From: Cyanophora paradoxa CCMP329
Taxonomy: Eukaryota; Plantae; Glaucophyta
Length of the DNA stretch: 64,000 nt
Direction: 5' to 3'
Assembly: GCA_004431415.1 (NCBI GenBank)
Contig: QPMI01000625.1
Coordinates: 1-64,000 of the forward strand
Part shown: positions 1-43,662 of the stretch, in pieces
How positions within the stretch are numbered: the stretch's first letter is position 1
Layout: each line of letters opens with the position of its first letter
Program-made: the position numbers and the translations under genes
Notes under the pieces: generated by a model
Databases searched by the model: none
Seen by the model: only the letters and a program-made list of their open reading frames with translations
Told to the model about the DNA's origin: nothing

Positions 1-3000
1 TGCAGCCGCCGCCGCGCTGCCGCTGCCACCGCCGCCGGCCAGCGGAGGGCGGGCGCCGCGGCCGCGGCCGCTTCTTGGCGGCTGGCGGGCGTCGGACGGG
101 GCGGGCGGAAGGTCTCAGGGGCGGTGCGGACCGGTGCCTTGGGTGCGGGCTTCTTCTTGGGGGCGCTCTCCTCGAAGTCGCTGCCGTCGTCGAGCTCCTC
201 CTCGCTGCCGCTCTCCTCGTCGCTCCCCGCCTTCTTCGCCGCTGGCTTGCGGGGCTTGGCCGCCGGCTTGCGGGCCTTGGCGGCGCCGGCCTTGGGCTTG
301 GGGGCCTTGGCGCCGCGCTCGTGCTCCTCGCGCTCGTAGGCGTCGTGGGCCTCGAGGAAGGCGTCGAGGTCGGCCTCCCACATCGCCGCCTCGGGCGTCG
401 CCTCCAGCTCCGCCAGCTCCTTCTCGTTCCGCGCCTGCCCGCCCCTTCAGCGCCCCCAACCCCGAGCCCGGCGCGGCGCCGGCGCGCGCCTTCTCGTTGA
501 GGAGCTCCTGCACGCGCTCGAAGGTGAGCGTCCACAGCGGCATCGAGAGGAGTAGTCGTACGCCGACCGCTGCGCTCCCGCAGCCCCGCATCACGCCCCG
601 CGGCGGCGCGGCGCGGGGCGGGGCGCGGACCGTGGCGGCGGCGGGGGCCTCCTTCTCCTTGCGGCGGGAGGCCGGGAGGAGGTCGTCGTCGCTGCTCGTC
701 CGCCTCGCGCTTCTTCTTCTTCTCCGCGCTCTCGATGGGGTCGTACTTGCGCGCCTGCAGCTCCGCCAGCAGCTCCGCCCGCTTCCGGTTCGAGACGACG
801 AGCTCGCCGCGCACGACCTGGCGCCGCCTCGGCGGGGGCGGGGGGCGGGAGGGTGGGGGCGGGGGCGCGCACCTCGAGGATGAAGCGGACCTTGTTGGAG
901 AGGCGGACCTGCTGCTCGCGGAGGCGGGCGAGGAGGAGGGCCTTGCGCTTGTGGTAGTACTCGAGGCGCAGCGGGTAGAAGTCGCGGAGGACGTCGAGCG
1001 CGCCGAGCCGTACTTCTTCAGCTTCCGTCCGCGCCCCACAGGTGCATGTTGTTCGTCGAGATGCTGTCCACCAGCTTGAACTTCTTCTCCAGCGCCGCCG
1101 CCTTCTGCTCCTCCGTGGTGGCGCCGGCGAGGCGGCCGCCATCTGCTCCTCGGTCATGTGGACGACGAAGTGGACGTGGTGTCCGTGTGGTGCTCCTTGA
1201 AGTCCTTGATCCAGACGCCCTGCTTGGCGTCGTCCCCCGTGATGGCCTCTCGAGCACCGAGGCCTTGTACTTCTGCGTCCACACCCCGACGGGCAGCTCG
1301 GTGATCTCCACCGTCGTCGCGCTCGTCTGCGTCACCCGCCCGTGCACCGTGTAGCCCTTCGCCGTCGGCGGATGTCCCCGTGAAGCCGCGGTACCACGGG
1401 TGCAGCGGCAGCAGCTCCTCCTCGGGCGCATCGGCCCCAGGCGCATCATCCGCCGCAGGTTCTCGACGAGGTCGCGCGGGTTGTAGCGCGGCACAGACGT
1501 GCTCCAGCCCGTGCCGATGCCTCCGCGCCGTTGACGAGGACGAGGGGGAGGATCGGCATGTACCAGTGGGGCTCGATGGACTGCCCGTCCTCCGTGTTGA
1601 ACTTGAGAGGCGGTCGTCGGCCTCGACGAAGAGCGTCCGCGTCGTCGCGCCAGGCGCGTCGAAGATGTAACGCGGGCTCGCCGCGTCGTCGCCACCCTGC
1701 CAGCCCCCTCAGCCGGCGCCGGCAGCGGCGGCGCTGGGCGTGGCGAGCCATCAGGCGGGTGCCGAAGGTGCCGGACGGTGGAGGAGGTTGACGTTGTTGG
1801 AGCCGACGAAGTTCTGCGCGAGCCTGCGCCGGCGTGAGCGGGGCCGACGGCTGCGGAAAACGCGGGCGCTTGATCATGGTGTCCATGAGGGAGACCTCGC
1901 CGTGGTGGTAGGCGGAGTGCTCGAGATGTAGCCGGCGAGCTGCGCCACCTTGACATCCTCTCGCAACCGCCGCTTGAAGCACGCGAAGAGGATCTTCCGC
2001 TGGCCCGGCTTGAGCCCGTCCACCATCGACGGATCGAGCGCACGTTGTCCGCCTGCCGCCGGCTCGCGCGGGGCCGGCGAGCGAGGCGCGGGCGGCGCGC
2101 CTGGGAGAAGAGGATGAGCTCCTTATCGACGAACTCCTTCAGGGCAGCTGCGAGCGGTTGCCGTGTCGAGGAAGGTCCCCGGCTGCGCCGGCGTCGGAGG
2201 CGGCGCGGCAGGGCCGGGGCGGGGCGGCGGACGGCGCAGTTGAGAGCCACTTCTTGCGCTCGTCGACGCGCTTGGAGGAGAAGGCGAGCTCGATGGCCTC
2301 GTCGTCGTGCGGCCGGTGTGCGCGAACTCGATCCGGTGCTGCCCCAGGTCCGCAAAGTACTCCTCGCCTCCGCCGCCGTGTTTGTGCCAGACCTGCCTCC
2401 CCGTCAGGTCCTGCGGCACGAAGGGCGGGGCGGGGCGGGGGCGGGCCCTTGTAGTACTTGACGGACCAGCCGCGGGAGGCGGGGCTGTCCCGCCACTTCT
2501 CGTACTCCGGCATCGTGTAGAACGCGATCGTCTCCTTACCCTTGTGCGCCTGCGACGAGGCCTCAGGGGCCGGCCCGGGGGCCGGTCGCGGCGCGGGGAG
2601 GCCGGGCTCGCCTTCACGATGGGGGTGATGAACTCGCAGAGGAAGCCCGGGATCTTGAGGAGGGAGGGCCACTGAGAGTGGATGAAGTTGATGAGGAGGC
2701 CCTTGATGTGCGACCCGTCGTGGTCCTGGTCCGTCATGATCATCAGGTGCCCGTACCGCAGCGACCGCGTGTCCTCGTAGTTCTTCCCGTGCTGGAAGCC
2801 CATGATCTGCGCTCCTCCGTCAGCCCCGCCCGCCCCCGCCCGCCCCCGCCGCGGCGCTCGCCTTGCGGATGGCGTCGATCTCCTTGTTCTCGGAGAGCTG
2901 CTTGAACGTCGCCTCGCGCACGTTCAGCAGCTTGCCGCGGAGCGGGAAGACGCCGTAGCTGCGGGGCCGCGTGAGGAGAGAGGGGCGGGGGCCGAGGGCG

Positions 3001-4617
3001 GGGCGGACCGGTCGCGGCCGACGACGGAGAGCCGGCGACGGCGAGGCCTTGGCGGAGTCTCCCTCCGTGAGGATCAGCGTGCACTGGTCCGCGTTCCGCC
3101 CCCCGCGTCGTTCGCGTCGTCCAACTGCTCCCGCGTCGGCACCGGGGGCGAGCCGGCCGCGCGCGGCGCTCGGCGGGCGGACCTTGTCGATTCCGACGAG
3201 GCGCTGCTTCTTCGTGCCGTCCTTCTTCTTAAGGGCGTTGCTCTGCTTGAATTTGGCGAACTCCATGAGCTGGTCACGATTCCGGACTTCATCACTGCGC
3301 CCGGCCGTCACGCGCGGGCCGCCCCGCCCGGTCCCTCTGCCCGCGCACCCTTCTTGATGATGTCTTCGCTGAGCTCGCACTTGGAGCCGAACGAGCTCGC
3401 CTGCGGTGGCGGGCGGGGTGAGCGCCCACGTTGAGCGGGCAAGGGGCGGCGGACCTTGAGGGTCATGTTCTCCTTGGTCTGCGAGTCGAACGCGGGGTTC
3501 TCAATGAGGCAGTTGATGAAGACGAAGAGGTAGTTCTTAACCTGCGCGCGCCACCCGCGTCAGGAGCGGGCGAGCGCGGCGCGAGCGCGGCGCGCACTTG
3601 GTGGTTCTTGAGCTGGATGCCCTTGACCTTCTTGTTGACGGCCTCGAGGAGCTTGCCGGTGACTTGGTCGGAGACGTAGTTGACGTGGGTGCCGCCCTTG
3701 CTGGTGCTGATGCTGTTGACGAAGCTGACCTGCTGGAACTGGCCGTCCGAGACGGCGACGCAGACCTCCCAGCGGTCGTTGACCTTCTCGTAGAAGCGCG
3801 GCTGCTCGCCCTTGTCGCCCTTGAAGTAGAGACTGACGTAGTCCTTGAAGCCCTTCACGGAGATGCGCGTACCGTTGAGGAAGACCTTGCAGCTCGACGT
3901 GCCCGCCACGTCGTACACGCGCTTCGTGAAGAGAGCCACAATGTCGTCGTCCAGGCCCTCCATGTGGAAGCGCCGCAGGTCCGGCACGAACGAGATCGAC
4001 GTCCAGTTGTCCGACGCCTTGCAAGATTTGATCTCCGGCTCCCCGCGGTCCTGCATGTTGTTCCGGAACACCTGCCGGTAACGCCGCCCGCGGCCGCCGT
4101 CGGCCGTCTCGACGATGAACTCGCGCGAGTAGATGTTCGTGAGCTTCGCGCCGTATCCGTTGCGCCCGCCGACGACCTTCTTCTCGTTGTCGTCGTAGTT
4201 GCTGGAAGTCAGCAGGTGCCCGAAGATCATCTCAGGAATGTAAATCTGCTCCTCCTTGTGGATCTCGACGGGGATGCCCGACCCGTTGTTCCAGACGCTG
4301 ATGCGGTTGTTCTCACGATCGATCTCAACTTTGATCGTGTCCATGTTCGCGTCGCGCTGCTTGTGGTCTGCAGCGTTAACGAGGATCTCGTCGAAGATCT
4401 TGAAGAGCCCCGGCGAGAAGGTCACAGGCCTGAACACCATGCCCTTGTCTCCGTCAAAGACCCAGAGCGGCAGCGACTGCTTCTCTGTGGACCCAATGTA
4501 CGTGTCGGGCCGCAGGAGGATGTGCTCAAGCTGCGACTTCTTCTGATAGATCTGCTCCAGCGTGCGCCCGCCATCGTTGCCGCCCGCAACGCCAAGAGCT
4601 TTCTTCGTAGTAGCCAT
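1..4617 (-). CDS. TOP2: DNA topoisomerase II (type IIA), multi-exon, 3' end runs off the window; many apparent single-base frameshifts in ~300-3300
   Basis: ATG at 4617 (MATTKK...). Motifs: YQKKSQLEHILLRPDTYIGS, FKIFDEILVNAADHKQRD, GGRNGYGAKLTNIYS, LILTEGDSAK, YGVFPLRGKLLNVRE, IMTDQDHDGSHIKGL, DGLKPGQRK, YHHGE, ITELPVGVWTQ, then a Lys/acidic C-terminal tail. GT-AG and GC-AG introns. Confidence 0.97.
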
Positions 4618-36928: not shown

Positions 36929-38897
36929 ATGCTTCTGACGGTCAACTGCGCGGACCGGCGCTTCCGGGTGAAGGTGGAGCCGTCGGAGAGCATCGCGCAG
37001 CTAAAGGTGCTGGTGCAGGCGGCGCTGTACGAGCTCTCTCTCTCCGAGTGCAGGGACGAGGTCTTCGCACTCGAGGATTCCGAGCGCCGCGGCCTGCCGT
37101 CCGCGCTCGCTGCTGGCGACGTGCTCGTGGATGGCGACGTCATTTTTGCAGTCCTCCGCGCGTGGACCGCGGCCAAGGAGGTGGGCGCGGCTCCTGGAGA
37201 GGCGGGCGGAGAAGAGGGCGGGGCGACGCTGCGGGCGAGCGTGGCGCCGGGGGCGGATGGGATCGCGCGCCTGAGGGCACTCTGGGCGGCCCTCGAGGCG
37301 GCCACGGCGCGCGAGCTGCTGGCGGCCTGCGTGACCGAGGAGGGCGCGAGCCGTGTGGCGGGGGACGGCGAGGCGCTGCGGCTGCTCGGCGCGTGCGCGG
37401 AGAGCGGCGATGCGCCCGTCCGCCTCGCTGCCACGCGCGCCTACCGCGCCCTTGCCGAGGCCGGTCCGCCCCCGCCGCCGGCGCGCCCCACCGGCCCACC
37501 GCCCCCGCAGACGCCGTCGCGCTGCTCCGCTCCGGCGCGGGGCGCGCCGCCCTCGGCCTCGCGCGGCAGCTCGCCGGCGACGCCGAGGAGGATGCGGCAG
37601 CGCTCTGCGCGGCGCTGGCCGGCGCGGCGGAGGGGGCGGCGCTCGTCGTGCAGGAGGGGCTCTGCGGACCGGTCGTCGCCTGGCTGCGCCGCGGCGGCCC
37701 TGCGCGGCCCCGCGCGCTCCGCGCCCTCTCCGCGATCGCCGCCTCCCGTGCGCGCCTCTGCAGCCGCACGCGCCTCCCCGAGAGCGGCGGCGCAGGTGGC
37801 GGGCGGGAAGCGCTGCTGCGGGCCGGCGCCGCCGGCGCCCTCCTCGCCCTTTTCCAGGTGGGAGTCCTGCCGGCCCTCCCCGAGGCGCCGTCGAGCGGGC
37901 CGCAGGAGGAGGCGGAGGAGGCGGTGCGGGGCGCCGGGGGCCGGCCGGTGGCGGGCGGGGCGGGGCTTGGGCCGGAGGGTGCCCTGGAGGCCCTCGTGCA
38001 CCTCTCCGGCAGCCATGCGAAGGCGCAAGGGTCCCCAGAGGGCGCCGCCGTGCGGCTCGCCCCGCCCCGCCGCCCTTGCCGCCAAGCGCGACGAGGCCGG
38101 CGGCGCAGGCGGCCTCCGGGCAGACGCCAGCGGCGGGGGTGGAGGAGCTGGTGCGGACGTGGGCGGCGCTGGCGCGGCTCGAGGGGGAGCCGGCGGTGCA
38201 GGCTCTCGCGGCCGGCGAGCTGCAGGCGGCGGCGCGCGAGGCGGGGCCCCGCGCGAGGCAGTCGCGAGGCACGCGATCCGGCCCCTCCTCCGCCTCCTCG
38301 AGGCCCCCGAGCCGGCCGCCACCGTGCGCCCCCCGCCCGGCGCCCAAGCGCCGCCCCGCCCGAGCGGCCCGCAGGCGGCCGCGGCGGCGATCGCGCAGGT
38401 TGCCCTCTCCGAGTACGGCAAGCGGAGCGCCGTGCGCGGGGCCGGGGTCCGGGCGGCCCTGGGAGCCGGCCGAGGGCGCGCGCAGATGGAGGCCGGCGCG
38501 GGCAGCGCGCTGGCTGGGGCGCTGCTGGCGCCCCGCGGCCTCGCCTTCCAGCAGGTCGCGGCGGCCGCCGCCGTGCGGACCGCGCCCTGCCTCACGCCCC
38601 GCAGGAGGCGCTGCGGGCCCTCGCCAACCTCGCCGCCCTCGAGGAGGCCCGCCTCCAGCTACGCCGCGAGCGGCGCGCCCTCCTGGCCCCGCCACTCGCG
38701 CCCGTCACGGCCCGCGCAGGCTGCTGCAGGCGCTGCTGGGGTCGGGCAACGCCCTCCACCGCGGCGACGCGCAGGTGGACGCGTACCTCTCCCTCGTGCG
38801 CTGCGCCCATGGTTGCGCGCTCGCGCGGCTCGCCTCGCGCCTCGGCTGACGCGCCCTCGTCGACGCTCAGCTGAGGCGCGCCCTCCAGTCGAGCTGA
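36929..38897 (+). CDS. N-terminal ubiquitin-like domain + ARM/HEAT repeats
   Basis: MLLTVNCADRRFRVKVEPSESIAQLKVLVQ...DVLVDGDVIFAV (beta-grasp-like), then ARM-like repeats (GALEALVHL, AIRPLLRLL, AAAAIAQVAL, ALRALANLA). Confidence 0.65.
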
Positions 38898-39139
38898 TCA
38901 CGAGGCCGGCGCGGCTGACCGAGGCGAACTGCACTAGTAAGGGTCGCTTCGGCCCGTCCCTTCCTCAATTCGTCTTCTTAATAAGTACAGCCCTGTTCGC
39001 TTCGAAAAGGGGCCCTGGTCTGTTTTGCCCACCGGTAGTCTCTTTCCGCAATCCCATAGAATTCGGGGTCCATCGATGCAACGTGCCGAGAAACAAAAGC
39101 GGGGGGGGGTTTGCAGGGAAGAGGGCGCGCGGCGGAGGC

Positions 39140-42100
39140 TCAGGGCTCGGGGGCGATGTAGAGCTCGTCGAGGGCGGGAGAGGCGCGCAGGCGCAGGCCG
39201 CGCTCGTTGGCGAGGTGGAGCAGGCACGCGAAGAGGACGCCGGGCGCGAGGCGCCCCTGCGCGGCGTCCTCCCGCAGCTCCCCCGCCAGCCGCCGCACCG
39301 TCCCCTGGAAGGAGCAGCCCTCCTCCCCCTGCAGCTCCTGCGCCGCCTTTCGGCGGGGGCCCCGGCGGGGGCGTGCGGGGCGGGCGTGCCTGGTCGACGA
39401 TGGACCACATGGAGGTCTTGAGGCGGCGGACGTCGATGACGAGCGGGAGGCGCGCATAGGCGACCCGCACGCGCTCCGCCCGGCGCGGGGCGGCGACGAG
39501 CACCAGGCCCTCGTCCGCGCCGGCGCCCTCGGCGGGGCCCTTGCCGAAGCCCCCGAGGTCGCCGAAGTCGGGCCCGAAGCCGAGCCCGCCGTCCCCGTCC
39601 TCGCCATCCTCGGCGCCGCCGCCGGGCCCCTCCTCGCCCTCCCCGGCCCCCGCCTCCCCGGGGTGCGCGCGGCGGCCTTCCTCGAAGGCCGCCACCAGCT
39701 CCGCGCACTCCAGCCGCTCCTCCGGCACCCTGCAAGGCCCTCGCGCCCCGCCCGCACCGCCCCGCCCCGCGCCCCCGCCGCGCCGCACCACTGCGACTCG
39801 TGCAACGGGTAGTTGAACCATTTCAGCAAGTACTCCACTCGCCCCTGCGCGGGCCTCAGGCGCGCCGCGGGGCCGGGAGGAGGGGCGGCGCCTTGCGCTC
39901 GCGGGAGGCGAGGATGGCCTCCACTTCGTACTGGTTCTCGCCCACGAGCTCCGCCCCCCGCTCGCCGCGCAGGAACGTCGCCCCCAGGCTCCCCGCGGAG
40001 TACGCCTGCCGCTCTACGGAGGGGGTCAGGGGGGGCGGAGCGCCGGCGCGGCCCCTGGCGGCGCGCTTTTGCGGAGGACCGTCGCGTGGCTCGAGGAGGG
40101 TCCCGCCCGCCTGGAATGCCGCGTCGGGTGCGTCGGAGGTGGGGCGGGGCGGGGCGGGGCGGACGGGGCGGGGCGGCGGGGCTGGCGCGCGGCGAGGGCG
40201 AGCAGGGCGGGGGCGGGCCCTTCCCCCGCGAAGTCCACGCGAAGAGCGCCCCGCCGCGCCCGCTTCGGCCGCTCCTTCGCCGGCGTCTCCCCTGCGCGCC
40301 GTCAGCCACCGGCGGGCCAAGGCGGGGCGGGCGGCGCTGGCCTGTGTGGGCCGCGAGAGGGAACTTCCAGAAAGGGTTGTGCTGCCTGAAGGTGCGTCGC
40401 AGCTCGAGCGGGAGCGCCTCCACCGCCGCGGGGCCCGGCCCGCGCGCCCCCGCCTCATCGTCCGAGCCCGCGCCGCCCGGGCCGTCGGCGTCGGCGTCGG
40501 CCTCGGGCGGGGGCGGGGCGTCGAAGTCGGGCAAAGGCCCCGCGCCGAAGTCGTCCAGGGGCTCCCCCTCGGGGTCGAAGAAGGCCTCGCCCCCCGCCGG
40601 CCCCCCGCCGGCACCTTCCCCCAAGCCCGCCCCGGGGGGAAGCGAGGGCGAGCGCGGCGCCAGTTCGACTGGCGGGCGCGGCGCCGGCTCCTCTTCGTCG
40701 TCATCGTCGGTGGCGGGGTCGAAGCGGCCGTCCCAAGGCTCCTCCTCGCGCAGCGCTTCGAGGCCGGCCGCCTCGAAGAGCTCGCCCGGCGTCGCCGGCC
40801 ACAGGCCCCACCCCAGCGCCCCCGCGGGGAGCAGCACTGCAAACCCGCCTGAGGTCGCGCGGGGCGCACGGGAGGGGACGGGGCCGAACCGCGTAGGGGG
40901 ACGAGGTCGAGGGCCGGGGCGGGGCCGGCGGGGCCGGCGGCCACGTGCGGCGCCTCTGCCGAGTCGAGGCAGAGCTGCCCGTCGCTGCGCACGCCGAGAG
41001 AGCACAGCAGCATCCCTTTTGCCCCGCCCTCGTCGAACTGCGCGCCCTGGCCTTCACGATCCAAGTCCAGGGCGCGCGGGGCGGGGCGGGGCGGGCCTTG
41101 GCGGCGGCGACGGAGAAAAGCGGGTCGGGGACGGCGGCGGCGCGCTCGGCGCCTTCCATCCCGATCTTCTCCTCCTCGCCCTCCTCCACCAAGAACGCCT
41201 GCCCGCCCCCACGTTAGCCCGCTAGACCGCCGCATTCCGCCCCCGCGCACCCGCTCCGCCTGCCGCGCCCGCCGGCGCTCGGCGGCGTTGCCCGCGGAAG
41301 CGCCGGGGCCGTCCAGGGCCTGGGACTGGCGGGGCTGGGCCTGGCCCTCGGCGGCGGCGACGAGCTGCGTGAGGCCAGACTGCGTGCGAAGGATCCAGGA
41401 GTGGAAGACGTCCACCCGCACACTGAGCCGCTGTCGGCGAGGGTGCAGGCAGGGGCGCGGGGCAGCGCCGCGCACCTGTAAATCCTCGCGCAGGCGTCGA
41501 CCACGACGCCGGCCACGGCGAAGTCCACCGTCACGCTCCCGTCCGCCGCCGTCACCGCGAGGGGCGTCACCTGCGCCTCCTCGAGCCGCCGGCGGTCGAC
41601 CCGGCCCCGCGCCAGCGCCTCGACGTGCTCCGTCAGTTGCAGCTGCCAGCAGTTCCGATCCGAAATCCGCTGCGCGGTGCGTCACGGGCCCGGCGGGCGG
41701 CCGACGGGCGGGGCGGCGCACGTTGTCGGCCGCGGCCTTCATCGTCACTATGAAGGCCATCGCGGCGTCAACGCCTGCGGTCAGCGAGCCCTGCAATGCC
41801 CTCGGTGAGGTGGGGAGCCGCAGCCCGGCCGCCGCACGGCGCGCACCTGCGGCCCGCGCCGTGGCTGCTGCTGCTGGGCTGCCCGTAGGACAAGGGCAAC
41901 GGAGGCCGGGGCGGCCTGCGTCCCGAGCCGTTCCTCGGCGTCTCGATCTTCCGTAGCCGGCTCAAACGCGCCGGAATCCGCCGCGACGATCCTCCGCCGC
42001 TCCGCCGGGCGCTGGGGCGAAGCGAGCATTTCCATTCCCGCCGCAGCCCGCTGACGCTTACGGGGCTTTGCGGCTGCGGGGGCCGCGGAGGCTTGGCCGG

Positions 42101-43116
42101 CCTGCGTCGCGAGCGGCGGCTCTTCCTCCACGGCCTCCAGAGAGCGCATCGGGGCCGCGGCGGCGCGGCTCGGGCCCGGCGCGCCGTCCTCGTCGCGCTC
42201 CAGCACCGACAGCTTTAGGGGCTGGGGGCTCACTGCCGCGCGCGCCGCCGCCGCCTTCTTCTTCTCGTGCGCGGCGATTCCTGTTGGCGAGGGCGTCGAG
42301 AGTTGTGCTGCCAGGGGCTTCCGCTTGTGCGCGGGGTCCGCCTGCGACTGAAGGTTCCCGAGAGGGGAGAAGGGGATCCTTGACATTGATGTCCTCGGCG
42401 CCGTCTTTGCGGACGGCTCGCCGAATTCACTCGGATCATTCTCATTACCGCCCACGCTTGGCCGGAGACTGGGGCGAGCTGCCGAGAAGTGAGACACGCT
42501 TGAGACACGCCTCATGGAGGAACAAACCCCTTTGCGTGACAAGAGCATCACGCGCGCGCCCCTGGCCCCTGATGGCCGCCTTGTTTGTGGGGTCCGCATC
42601 GAGAACCTGCCGAGAGAAACTCGTGGGGCTGTACCGCACAAAGTCTTGGCGAGCTGCGGACCTTCTGGTAGTACTTTATAGCTTGGTCGTTGTCACCAAG
42701 ACCGGCGCACACTCGGCCGGCGAGGATCAGCTCCGGGGCGGCTCGGCTATCGTTGACCCAGCCAGACAACTGCGGAGACCTGTATCTGGCCAAGTTTGAA
42801 CGACAGTTGCACTTGGATCAAGCTCTCACGTCACTGTACGCGTCGCAGTAGCGTCCCAGTTTCTCGTACACGACAGCGCGATTGAAGAGGGCTGGGAGTC
42901 CTCTCAGCACATGGCATCGGTCGCTGGAGAAGCGGCCGCGGGCGCACCGATCTTGGAGTTGGGATCGAGTGCGAGCGCTGCTGAAAAGTGCTCTATCGCC
43001 GCTAGCAAGTCTCCTGACTTGAATGCTGCCAATCCGCGGTTTCCAGCATCGGCGACCTGCCCGCGTTGCTCACGCCCGCCTGCAGCACGGATGGCTGCAT
43101 GCACAGCCGCGGCCAT
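39140..43116 (-). CDS. NCAPH: Condensin I kleisin (CAP-H/Barren/Cnd2) with an internal chromodomain and a probable N-terminal TPR module
   Basis: Kleisin N: AADN|RISDRNCWQL...DFAVAGVVVDACARIY|SVRVD. Middle: DPLFSVAAAK|FDEGGAKGMLL. C-terminal: VAYARLPLVIDVRRLKTSMW...FACLLHLANERGLRL. Chromodomain at 39678-39930; TPR exons at 42528-43116. Confidence 0.88.
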
Positions 43117-43662
43117 AGGATGCCGCGGCTCTGAATCGATGTTCTGGTTGCTAGCTGGTTTACGCCGCGGCCGGCGCGGCGCAGCGAGGGTGCACGCAGG
43201 CCGTTGTTTTCAAACCTGACAAGGAACGAGGGGTAGTGTATTTTAGACTCATAGGCGTCGACGCGGACTCGGACCGGACGTCGACGTCGATCGCGAGCTC
43301 GTCTACAGCTATACTAGTACTATATATATATATATGATATCGCTAACGTTAACCATGCCGATGGACTCCGGACCGTGGCATGATATCGATCACGGGCGGT
43401 TTTGCGCCAGCAGATCTGAGTTATCAATGGAATGTCAGAGTTAGAGCCAGTATCGATCGACGTCGACGTATGCGCATGCATGCATGCGAATGCATAAGCC
43501 TCAAGCTCGAGGGTATAGGGGCTCCCCCCCCAAAACGCGCCCCATGCCAGGCTCGCATGTGCACACGCGTGTAAGGGTGCTCAACGTTCTCTAAAGCATT
43601 GATCGGCCATTAAAAGCCTCAACCTGTAACTCAATCAAAATATAGGAGCCGAGCACTGGATG

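What the first reader, a model, noticed from the sequence alone, without database searches (positions are those of the whole stretch)
39678..39930. Chromodomain inserted inside a condensin I kleisin (CAP-H): a possible histone-mark-reading condensin
Seen: removing two introns (39845-39891 GC-AG; ~39730-39788 GT-AG) gives YEVEAILASRERKGRVEYLLKWFNYPLHESQWVPEERLECAELVAAFEE. This is a canonical HP1/Polycomb-type chromodomain with the three aromatic-cage positions (Y, W, Y) intact. Its last exon runs without a break into the kleisin C-terminal motif (VAYARLPLVIDVRRLKTSMW...CLLHLANE), and kleisin N and middle motifs lie upstream, so it is internal to the gene. Known: characterised CAP-H/Brn1/Cnd2 proteins have no chromodomain. 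The kleisin motifs are also divergent (DFAVAGVVVDAC versus the usual NFQxASCTLD). Inference: a specialised condensin paralogue targeted directly to methyl-lysine chromatin (H3K9me or H3K27me), linking heterochromatin marks to loop extrusion.
Basis: partly seen in the sequence, partly recalled or inferred. Interest (0 to 1): 0.88.

Follow-up and report, generated by a model that had tools for sequence, protein, structure and literature searches.

The report
Condensin kleisin with built-in chromodomain
The alga Cyanophora paradoxa expresses a condensin "clasp" protein (CAP-H type) with an HP1-like histone-mark-reading chromodomain built into it and a TPR module at its front end, a design seen in only one other organism, so chromosome folding may here be wired directly to heterochromatin marks.

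Summary
On the minus strand, 39143-43116 is one 17-exon gene of Cyanophora paradoxa. It scores 50 bits against Pfam Chromo, its Y/W/Y aromatic cage is intact, and an AF2 model fits the HP1-H3K9me2 structure 1KNA at 0.8 A.

The chromodomain lies between the kleisin middle motifs and the C-terminal winged helix of a CAP-H/Cnd2 protein (Pfam Cnd2 E 5e-41). Intron-free contigs in three runs from two studies carry these exons in frame. The ORF is 1038 aa: TPR, CAP-H N-terminal part, chromodomain, CAP-H winged helix.

A search of 1.84 billion representative proteins found one other protein with this architecture. It is a polyadenylated MMETSP transcript (1068 aa, 26% identical) with the same domain order and insertion site. 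That sample also encodes a canonical CAP-H, so the fusion is a paralogue there. Eighty-one other CAP-H proteins have Cnd2 only. No paper found describes it.

Methyl-lysine binding, assembly with SMC2/4 and heterochromatin targeting are inferred, not shown. Verdict: a real, expressed, conserved new variant of a known kind.

The parts
39143..43116 (-). Whole coding region: 17 exons, 16 introns of 47-60 nt (10 GT-AG, 6 GC-AG), ORF of 1038 aa, stop at 39140-39142
   Evidence: Joints in spliced contigs of runs X1/X3/X7. Splice-site fitting and local translation. Identical to public model P0001 except for an 18-aa retained intron.
42528..43116 (-). Exons 1-4 (42948-43116, 42830-42891, 42662-42769, 42528-42606): N-terminal three-repeat TPR domain, start ATG at 43114-43116
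   Evidence: Pfam TPR_1 E 1e-14 and related families at residues 26-130. Joints 42891>42948, 42769>42830, 42604>42660 and 42478>42528 splice these exons onto the kleisin. The orthologue P0013 has the same domain.
41847..42478 (-). Exon 5: low-complexity basic, Ser/Thr-Pro-rich linker between the TPR domain and the kleisin
   Evidence: Translation. Covered without a break by contigs X1 record 1, X3 record 12 and X7 record 15.
41251..41790 (-). Exons 6-8 (41722-41790, 41476-41669, 41251-41422): kleisin N-terminal domain (...NCWQLQL..., DFAVAGVVVDACARIYSVRVD...)
   Evidence: Pfam Cnd2 profile 68-262. Aligns to yeast Brn1 residues 34-56 and 64-221 in cryo-EM entries 7Q2X/6YVU.
40890..41198 (-). 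Exons 9-10 (41097-41198, 40890-41037) with the DPLF...FDEGGAKG motif. Between them lies a 59-nt GC-AG intron, 41038-41096.
   Evidence: Pfam Cnd2 E 3e-5 on this exon alone. Brn1 alignment. Intron length agrees with record numbering (249 nt of record for 308 genomic).
40067..40836 (-). Exons 11-13 (40342-40836, 40165-40291, 40067-40110): acidic linker, HNPFWKF and basic-RVDF motifs (counterparts of GPxHWK / IDF). The in-frame 54-nt intron 40111-40164 is retained in model P0001.
   Evidence: Alignment with 9 canonical CAP-H proteins. Joints 40290>40341 and 40013>40067. The 54-nt intron is inferred from record-length accounting.
39892..40013 (-). Exon 14: degenerate end of the LPxDxHY...LFLKP motif, then chromodomain strand 1 (YEVEAILASRERK, 39892-39930)
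   Evidence: Joints 40013>40067 and 39843>39891 in three runs.
39845..39891 (-). Chromodomain intron 1, 47 nt, GC-AG
   Evidence: Joint seen in X1, X3 and X7, absent from DNA run X12. Splice-site fit.
39789..39844 (-). Exon 15: chromodomain strands 2-3 (GRVEYLLKWFNYPLHESQW) with cage residues W and Y
   Evidence: Pfam Chromo E 4e-4 on this exon alone. HP1 alignment.
39730..39788 (-). Chromodomain intron 2, 59 nt, GT-AG, phase 2 (splits the Trp codon). G-rich repeat, masked by the reads tool.
   Evidence: Sequence. Exon edge at 39730 in contigs of three runs, plus record-length accounting.
39390..39729 (-). Exon 16: chromodomain C-terminal helix (39678-39729), Gly/acidic linker, then kleisin motif PRR...VAYARLPLVIDVRRLKTSMW
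   Evidence: Pfam Cnd2 E 2.5e-8, profile 640-682. Continuous in contigs of X1, X3 and X7.
39143..39337 (-). Exon 17: C-terminal winged helix (…FACLLHLANERGL…), preceded by the 52-nt GC-AG intron 39338-39389
   Evidence: Pfam Cnd2 E 1.4e-8, profile 707-763. Aligns to the Brn1 C-terminal domain of PDB entries 6QJ2/6QJ4. Joint 39336>39389.

Best explanation
This is a lineage-restricted paralogue-type member of the CAP-H/Brn1/Cnd2 (condensin I gamma-kleisin) family in Cyanophora paradoxa that has gained two modules.

Shown:
- One spliced mRNA encodes, in order: a three-repeat TPR domain; a basic Ser/Thr-Pro-rich tail; the kleisin N-terminal domain; the FDEGGAKG motif; the HWK/IDF region; an HP1-like chromodomain; an acidic/Gly linker; and the kleisin C-terminal winged helix.
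- The chromodomain has an intact Tyr/Trp/Tyr cage. It is inserted directly after the last middle motif.
- The same order and the same insertion point occur in one distant orthologue.
- The chromodomain is the best conserved segment between the two proteins (about 51% against 26% overall).

Inferred:
- The protein still bridges SMC2 and SMC4 through its N- and C-terminal domains.
- Its chromodomain binds a methylated lysine on a histone tail, most likely H3K9me2/3.
- This would give a condensin-type complex that is recruited to, or anchored on, heterochromatic nucleosomes in cis, rather than through a separate adaptor protein.
- The domain sits next to the region that in yeast forms the kleisin/CAP-G DNA 'safety belt' (established knowledge). 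It is therefore well placed to hold the anchor side of the complex on marked chromatin.
- The TPR module probably docks a regulator or chaperone. Its partner is unknown.
For: Gene structure and expression:
- Contigs without introns in X1, X3 and X7 (two studies) show 14 listed joints at canonical GT/GC-AG sites. DNA run X12 has none of them.
- One 5068-nt contig spans 39000-43211.
- The fitted exons give an open 1038-aa frame.

Domains:
- Cnd2 141.8 bits, Chromo 50.3 bits, TPR_1 53.9 bits on P0001. Exon-by-exon hits agree.

Chromodomain:
- Best PDB sequence matches are CBX5 (E 6e-14) and Drosophila HP1 (E 2e-12), with the Y, W and Y cage positions aligned.
- The AF2 model has pLDDT 89-95 over the core.
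- It superposes on 1KNA (HP1 with the H3K9me2 peptide) at rmsd 0.8 A over 52 residues, TM 0.94.

Kleisin ends:
- They align to Brn1 34-221 and to the Brn1 C-terminal domain.

Conservation:
- P0013 is 1068 aa, from complete polyadenylated transcripts in two MMETSP samples.
- It has TPR, Cnd2 (E 2e-71) and Chromo (E 3e-12) in the same order, with the insert at the same alignment position.
- The two proteins are sister with SH-aLRT 99 on columns that exclude the TPR and chromodomain.

Rarity:
- Only these two of the 150 best representatives carry both domains.
- 81 other CAP-H proteins carry Cnd2 only.

Paralogy:
- Canonical CAP-H P0153 comes from the same sample, with the same GC and codon use.
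Against: - No binding or complex data exist.
- Both chromo-kleisins sit on very long branches (about 1.3-2 substitutions per site). Their pairing carries a long-branch warning.
- Cyanophora's middle motifs are degenerate: DFAVAGVVVDAC for NFxxASxTLD, and a weak LPxDxHY motif. Loss of some canonical contacts is therefore possible.
- A second, canonical CAP-H was not found for Cyanophora. The searches were insensitive, so it is open whether this is a specialised copy or the only one.
- Chromodomains can also bind non-histone methyl-lysines, RNA or DNA.
- The runs are only guessed to be RNA. Contigs also cannot exclude minor isoforms that skip the chromo exons.
Confidence: 0.55

Rival explanations
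1. The architecture is real, but the chromodomain is not a histone-mark reader. It would bind a methylated non-histone protein (for example another condensin subunit or a regulator), or RNA/DNA, or act as an intramolecular switch. It would then regulate the complex rather than target heterochromatin.
For: Among the structural matches, CBX7 was solved with a SETDB1 methyl-peptide (4X3S) and MPP8 with a DNMT3A methyl-peptide (3SVM). No ARKS/ARTK-like histone mimic was found in the protein itself. That neither helps nor excludes a partner acting in trans.
Against: The closest sequence and structure matches are HP1-class domains solved with H3K9me peptides, at 44-48% identity and 0.8 A. The cage and the flanking acidic residues are conserved in both orthologues.
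Confidence: 0.2
2. The protein is a fast-evolving former kleisin that no longer closes an SMC2-SMC4 ring. It would work as a chromatin scaffold (TPR plus chromodomain) independent of condensin.
For: Branches are long, amino-acid composition is unusual and the middle motifs are degenerate. A canonical CAP-H in the sister organism could carry the essential function.
Against: The N-terminal domain, the FDEGGAKG motif and the C-terminal winged helix are still recognised by Pfam Cnd2 and by Brn1 structures in both species, after divergence to 26% overall identity. This is the pattern expected if the SMC- and HEAT-binding sites are under selection.
Confidence: 0.15
3. It is a gene-model or assembly artefact: a separate chromodomain gene, or a retroelement chromodomain, wrongly merged into the kleisin.
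For: GC-rich DNA gives very long stop-free frames by chance: 637-701 codons here. The public model does contain one error, a retained 54-nt intron.
Against: Precise splice joints flank the chromo exons in three runs from two studies. An independent full-length polyadenylated transcript from a 47% GC organism has the same architecture. No retroelement domains appear in the Pfam scan.
Confidence: 0.03

Closest known systems
Canonical condensin I kleisin CAP-H / Brn1 / Cnd2 / Barren (Pfam PF05786)
   Same: N-terminal domain, FDEGGAKG motif, HWK/IDF region and C-terminal CLLHLANE winged helix, in the same order. It aligns to yeast and Chaetomium Brn1 structures.
   Different: It carries an N-terminal TPR domain and an internal chromodomain that 81 other family members lack. 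It evolves much faster, and its middle motifs are degenerate.
HP1 / CBX chromodomains (PF00385), e.g. Drosophila HP1 in 1KNA and human CBX5
   Same: 44-48% identity, a three-strand-plus-helix fold at 0.8 A, and an aromatic cage Y/W/Y.
   Different: There is no chromoshadow domain and no hinge. The domain is embedded in an SMC-complex subunit rather than in a small adaptor protein.
Adaptor-mediated or HEAT-mediated reading of histone marks by condensins (Drosophila Cap-H2 with the chromodomain protein Mrg15; condensin II subunits with H4K20me1), as reviewed in PMC5784890
   Same: The same logic: a methyl-lysine reader directs a condensin to particular chromatin.
   Different: Here the reader domain is part of the kleisin polypeptide of a condensin I-type subunit.
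Kleisin paralogues that define specialised condensins in Tetrahymena (PMC6724606)
   Same: Extra CAP-H-type paralogues beside a canonical one give specialised complexes (here; for the MMETSP organism).
   Different: In that paper the only chromodomain protein mentioned is the separate protein Pdd1. No kleisin chromodomain is reported there.
Three-repeat TPR domains of Hop/STIP1, SPAG1, RPAP3 and PP5
   Same: These are the best natural PDB matches for the N-terminal domain of P0013 (E 3e-26 to 1e-12).
   Different: It is fused to a kleisin. Whether the chaperone-tail-binding residues are kept was not assessed.

Membership tests
CAP-H/Brn1/Cnd2 condensin I kleisin | Matches Pfam Cnd2 (PF05786) above the gathering score | tested here: met
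   141.8 bits against a cut-off of 29.8 for P0001. Three single exons score 23-34 bits each.
CAP-H/Brn1/Cnd2 condensin I kleisin | N-terminal helical domain homologous to the SMC2-neck-binding part of Brn1 | tested here: met
   Aligns to Brn1 residues 34-56 and 64-221 of 7Q2X/6YVU, E 1e-8. The sequence is divergent (DFAVAGVVVDAC).
CAP-H/Brn1/Cnd2 condensin I kleisin | DPLF...FDEGGAKG motif (the CAP-D2/Ycs4-binding region, from established knowledge) | tested here: met
   Present and aligned.
CAP-H/Brn1/Cnd2 condensin I kleisin | GPxHWK, IDF and LPxDxHY...LFLKP motifs (the CAP-G/Ycg1 'safety belt' region, from established knowledge) | tested here: inconclusive
   HNPFWKF and RVDF are recognisable. 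The LPxDxHY block is weak in Cyanophora and clearer in P0013.
CAP-H/Brn1/Cnd2 condensin I kleisin | C-terminal winged helix (CLLHLANE) homologous to the SMC4-head-binding domain | tested here: met
   Cnd2 profile 707-763. Aligns to the Brn1 C-terminal domain in 6QJ2/6QJ4, E 4e-8.
CAP-H/Brn1/Cnd2 condensin I kleisin | Physical assembly with SMC2, SMC4, CAP-D2 and CAP-G | not testable with these tools
CAP-H2 (condensin II kleisin) | Matches CNDH2_N/M/C Pfam families above threshold | tested here: not met
   CNDH2_N scores only 18.4 bits against a cut-off of 32.3. There is no CNDH2_C hit.
Chromodomain (PF00385), HP1/Polycomb class | Full-length match to the Pfam Chromo profile above threshold | tested here: met
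   50.3 bits, profile positions 1-52 of 53. P0013 scores 46.8 bits.
Chromodomain (PF00385), HP1/Polycomb class | Three-stranded sheet packed against a C-terminal helix | tested here: met
   AF2 model has strands 22-31, 34-41 and 50-53 and helix 60-72. rmsd to 1KNA is 0.8 A, TM 0.94.
Chromodomain (PF00385), HP1/Polycomb class | Aromatic cage of three residues (HP1 Y24, W45, Y48; numbering from memory) | tested here: met
   Y, W and Y align column for column with Drosophila HP1 in both orthologues.
Chromodomain (PF00385), HP1/Polycomb class | Methyl-lysine peptide binding and its specificity (K9 or K27) | not testable with these tools
   Needs peptide binding assays.
HP1 protein family | Chromoshadow domain C-terminal to the chromodomain | tested here: not met
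   No chromoshadow family appears in the Pfam scan. It has an HP1-like domain but is not an HP1 protein.
Co-chaperone-type three-TPR domain | Three TPR repeats matching TPR profiles | tested here: met
   TPR_1 53.9 bits plus several related families at residues 26-130. Nearest natural structures are Hop, SPAG1 and RPAP3.
Co-chaperone-type three-TPR domain | Residues that clamp the Hsp70/Hsp90 C-terminal tail | not tested
   Not assessed residue by residue.

The most novel reading that the evidence does not exclude
Cyanophora and one other protist have a dedicated 'heterochromatin condensin'. This would be a condensin I-type SMC2/4 complex whose own kleisin reads H3K9 methylation through an embedded HP1-like chromodomain placed beside the DNA anchor site. 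Loop extrusion or compaction would then be seeded or anchored directly on marked nucleosomes. An N-terminal TPR module would add a second, regulatory docking site. That would be a natural reader-extruder fusion with no described counterpart.
Probability: 0.4. Interest if true: 0.85.

Novelty: new variant of a known kind. Interest (0 to 1): 0.72.

Why it matters
How SMC complexes choose where to act on chromatin is an open question. Known links between condensin and histone marks go through separate adaptor proteins or HEAT subunits (PMC5784890). Here evolution has put a histone-reader fold into the kleisin itself, kept it in two very different genomes, and kept it better than the rest of the protein.

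This gives a simple, testable system. A 60-residue domain can be expressed and tested on peptide arrays. The full protein can be tested for SMC2/4 association and for co-localisation with heterochromatin. A methylome of C. paradoxa already exists (PMC12344493).

The finding also corrects the public gene model by removing a retained 54-nt intron. It shows that the TPR-kleisin join, which could look like a prediction artefact, is supported by RNA and by an orthologue.

Tried and rejected
1. Gene-model artefact: rejected by spliced contigs and by the orthologous transcript.

2. Second CAP-H in Cyanophora: two word-indexed searches and a look-up by sequence in earlier findings found none. One search also failed to retrieve P0001 itself, so this negative is weak.

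3. P0252/L019 (a 973-aa, GC-rich, Cnd2-only protein) was considered as Cyanophora's canonical CAP-H. It was dropped. It lies on an intron-free contig with AT- and GA-rich spacers, and codon use did not discriminate it from an unrelated GC-rich control.

4. The metagenome scan with the chromodomain-to-winged-helix alignment gave 14 loci, all chromodomain only. None has a kleisin C-terminus nearby.

5. The ESM Atlas search returned only ordinary kleisin clusters, all scoring 0.80 or lower.

6. Species of the MMETSP samples (IMG 3300017104 and 3300017186): not recoverable here. A paper search for the Logan run id of L019 (SRR23378604) found nothing.

7. The AU test on the 71-row mixture-model tree did not finish. 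A 30-row LG+G4 test did not reject a clade of the two chromo-kleisins with the same-sample canonical CAP-H (p-AU 0.45). This leaves the time of the duplication open.

8. Two further joints (40610>40763 and 41715>42235) have only 20-21 nt on one side, come from other contigs and are missing in X7 (and 41715>42235 in X3 too). I read them as repeat mis-joins.

9. Complex prediction was not used, because no SMC2/4, HEAT subunit or histone sequence of this organism was available.

10. Handling of the spliced model: no self-joined spliced protein was sent to any search tool. Exons were searched one by one by reference. The full-length searches used the public model P0001 by id. Exons were joined only inside local scripts, to check the reading frame and composition.
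Full report
**What is in the sequence**

The window is very GC-rich (0.55-0.83) and eukaryotic. On the minus strand between 39143 and 43116 the three frames hold a chain of short exons.

- ...YEVEAILASRERK ends at 39892.
- A 47-nt GC-AG intron (39845-39891) follows.
- Exon 39789-39844 reads GRVEYLLKWFNYPLHESQW.
- A 59-nt GT-AG intron (39730-39788) splits the Trp codon.
- Exon 39390-39729 begins VPEERLECAELVAAFEE. It then runs in frame through a Gly/acidic linker into the kleisin motif VAYARLPLVIDVRRLKTSMW.
- A further 52-nt GC-AG intron (39338-39389) separates this exon from the last one, which holds CLLHLANE.

Scanned one exon at a time by reference, three exons hit Pfam Cnd2 (E 3e-5, 2.5e-8, 1.4e-8). 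The 19-residue middle chromodomain exon alone hits Chromo (E 4e-4).

**The public model and the organism**

A search with the last exon found the genome's own predicted protein, P0001. This is EukProt EP00741_Cyanophora_paradoxa_P022031, tig00021433_g21267.t1, 1056 aa. An earlier follow-up note of this scan also names the organism as Cyanophora paradoxa.

Because P0001 has an id, the whole spliced protein could be scanned without typing it. Results were Cnd2 141.8 bits (E 4.7e-41), Chromo 50.3 bits (E 2.2e-13, profile 1-52 of 53, residues 847-895) and TPR_1 53.9 bits with related TPR families at residues 26-130. CNDH2_N was far below threshold, so this is a CAP-H-type kleisin and not CAP-H2.

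**Expression and splicing**

Seven of the runs guessed to be RNA hold about two thirds of the stretch's words. I laid three of them (X1, X3, X7; two studies) and one old DNA run (X12) on 39000-43300.

- X1, X3 and X7 hold contigs with precise gaps at 39336>39389, 39843>39891, 40013>40067, 40290>40341, 40836>40890, 41197>41250, 41422>41476, 41669>41722, 41789>41846, 42478>42528, 42604>42660, 42769>42830 and 42891>42948.
- X12 shows none of these joints, and one of its contigs covers 39722-40131 unspliced.
- All these gaps fit GT-AG or GC-AG on the minus strand within the stated ambiguity.
- One X1 contig of 5068 nt runs from 39000 to 43211 through all of them.
- Three introns lie in masked (CCCCG)n-type repeats, so their joints are not listed. 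The contig's own numbering requires them: 246 nt of record for 459 genomic bases between 39731 and 40189. That equals introns of 59, 47, 53 and 54 nt. Likewise 249 nt for 308 between 40890 and 41197 gives a 59-nt intron.

Joined in a local script only, the 17 exons give an open frame of 1038 codons. It is identical to P0001 except that P0001 retains the in-frame 54-nt intron 40111-40164, which adds 18 residues.

So transcripts include the chromodomain exons in frame. Two limits remain. The RNA label of the runs is a guess, although splicing shows a cDNA origin. Contigs also cannot exclude rare isoforms.

The same contigs splice four upstream exons (42528-43116) onto the exon that holds the ATG at 42386. 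The frame stays open from an ATG at 43116. The protein therefore starts with a three-repeat TPR domain. This could be taken for a merged neighbour gene, but the joint 42478>42528 is seen in three runs, and the orthologue described below has the same domain.

**The chromodomain**

Against PDB sequences the best matches are human CBX5 (E 5.8e-14), Drosophila HP1 (1.7e-12), mouse CBX1, then CBX8 and CBX7. The Tyr, Trp and Tyr of the HP1 cage align column for column (the HP1 residue numbers are from memory).

An AF2 model built on a 20-sequence alignment has pLDDT 89-95 over the core and the expected three strands plus a helix. Foldseek places it on 1KNA (HP1 with the H3K9me2 peptide) at rmsd 0.8 A over 52 residues, TM 0.94, 48% identity. 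CBX1/3/5/6/7 complexes with H3K9me3 or H3K27me3 follow closely.

There is no chromoshadow domain. These data cannot decide specificity between K9 and K27. One survey found no core PRC2 genes in Cyanophora. It used the older assembly, and the authors caution about annotation (PMC5405695). This makes H3K9me the more likely target. DNA methylation on repeats has been mapped in this alga (PMC12344493).

**Position in the kleisin**

- The N-terminal domain aligns to yeast Brn1 residues 34-56 and 64-221 of the cryo-EM entries 7Q2X/6YVU. This includes DPLF...FDEGGAKG.
- The C-terminus aligns to the Brn1 C-terminal domain of 6QJ2/6QJ4.
- In a MAFFT alignment with nine canonical CAP-H proteins (plants, holozoans, an amoebozoan, a fungus, a haptophyte and unnamed environmental sequences), the chromodomain fills a gap. 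The gap comes directly after the LPxDxHY...LFLKP block and before the acidic linker that precedes the PRR...VDV..LK..W motif.
- From established knowledge of yeast condensin, that block belongs to the region where the kleisin wraps DNA on the CAP-G/Ycg1 subunit. The reader domain therefore sits beside the DNA anchor. That last step is inference.

**Is the architecture known or widespread?**

A phmmer search with P0001:780-1056 against 1.84 billion representatives gave 2431 hits. The best 150 were returned. Local phmmer on those 150 shows 139 with a chromodomain and 13 with a kleisin C-terminus. Only two have both: P0001 and P0013.

P0013 has these properties:
- It is 1068 aa and is encoded by complete transcripts (ORF 80-3286 of 3592 nt, poly(A) end, 47% GC) in two MMETSP samples held by IMG.
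- It has TPR, Cnd2 (E 2.3e-71) and Chromo (E 2.8e-12) in the same order.
- It aligns end to end with P0001 at 26% identity.
- Its chromodomain is at the same alignment position, with the cage conserved.
- Its chromodomain is about 51% identical to that of P0001, so this segment is better kept than the rest.

A word-indexed search with P0013:400-1068 returned 81 other CAP-H proteins from animals, fungi, plants, diatoms and others. All are annotated with PF05786 only. A scan of JGI metagenome contigs found only free-standing chromodomains, and the ESM Atlas gave only ordinary kleisin clusters. Full-text searches for condensin or kleisin together with chromodomain found only trans-acting cases (Mrg15 with Cap-H2, H4K20me1 with condensin II, Pdd1 in Tetrahymena). 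None describes a kleisin with its own chromodomain.

The architecture is therefore rare and, as far as these sources go, undescribed. Both proteins do already sit in public databases with precomputed Pfam hits.

**Paralogue or only copy?**

In trees built on columns that exclude the TPR and the chromodomain, P0001 and P0013 are sisters (SH-aLRT 99). Both have very long branches, so there is a long-branch caveat. The shared TPR and the shared insertion site are independent support for common origin.

The canonical Cnd2-only protein P0153 (706 aa, Cnd2 E 1e-120) is encoded in the same MMETSP sample as P0013. It has matching GC (46-47%), GC3 (0.43-0.44) and codon frequencies (r = 0.81, against 0.07-0.13 for a control). 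That organism therefore has a normal CAP-H plus the chromo-kleisin.

An AU test does not reject a clade of the three (p = 0.45), so the age of the duplication is open. For Cyanophora no second CAP-H was found, but the searches were insensitive. The species of the MMETSP samples could not be recovered. It may or may not be a glaucophyte.

**Mechanism**

Shown: the gene, its splicing, its domains, the fold, the cage, the insertion site, the conservation and the rarity.

Inferred: the protein still closes an SMC2-SMC4 ring. Its chromodomain binds a methylated histone tail, most likely H3K9me2/3. This brings or anchors a condensin-type complex to heterochromatin in cis. The TPR domain, whose nearest natural structures are Hop, SPAG1 and RPAP3, docks an unknown partner.

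Rivals: a non-histone or nucleic-acid ligand for the chromodomain; a former kleisin that has left condensin; and an artefact, which is essentially excluded.

No self-joined spliced sequence was sent to any search tool. Exons were searched by reference, and full-length searches used P0001 and P0013 by id. Joining was done only inside local scripts, for frame and composition checks.

Noticed in passing
window 40111-40164 (minus strand): The public model P0001 retains an in-frame 54-nt GT-AG intron, adding 18 Pro/Ala-rich residues. RNA contig length accounting indicates the intron is spliced out.
   Followed up: partly
window 39143-43116: All 16 introns are 47-60 nt long. Six are GC-AG, with donors such as GCGCCGCC, GCGCGCCG, GCACGCCC, GCCAGCGC and GCCCGCCC.
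   Followed up: yes
window 39741-39791, 40132-40189, 41067-41104: Three introns of this gene carry (CCCCG)n / (CGGGG)n pentamer runs. The reads tool masked them as repeats, so their splice joints are not listed directly.
   Followed up: no
window about 42000 (compare 1-42000 with 42001-64000): GC content drops from about 0.77 to 0.55-0.65 inside this gene. GC3 is 0.67 in the TPR exons against 0.92-0.98 in the kleisin and chromodomain exons, so the gene straddles a compositional boundary.
   Followed up: partly
window 38400-39143 and below: The 5068-nt X1 contig continues 1716 nt beyond position 39000. The transcript of the convergent plus-strand gene, whose frame ends near 38850, therefore seems to overlap or abut this gene's 3' end. 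Contigs here can bridge neighbouring genes.
   Followed up: no
L017 (IMG sample 3300017104): The MMETSP organism that has the TPR-Cnd2-Chromo protein also expresses a canonical 706-aa CAP-H (P0153). Its nearest sequences in the trees are holozoan and amoebozoan, so that organism's taxonomic position is uncertain.
   Followed up: partly
L019 (Logan SRR23378604): A 973-aa Cnd2-only kleisin lies on an intron-free, GC-rich contig with GA- and AT-rich spacers. It comes from an unidentified organism and was the closest in identity to the Cyanophora protein in one tree. It is probably unrelated to this genome.
   Followed up: partly
window 43310-43340: A short (TA)n run and lower-GC sequence lie about 200 nt upstream of the start codon, in an otherwise GC-rich region. 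This may be the promoter region.
   Followed up: no
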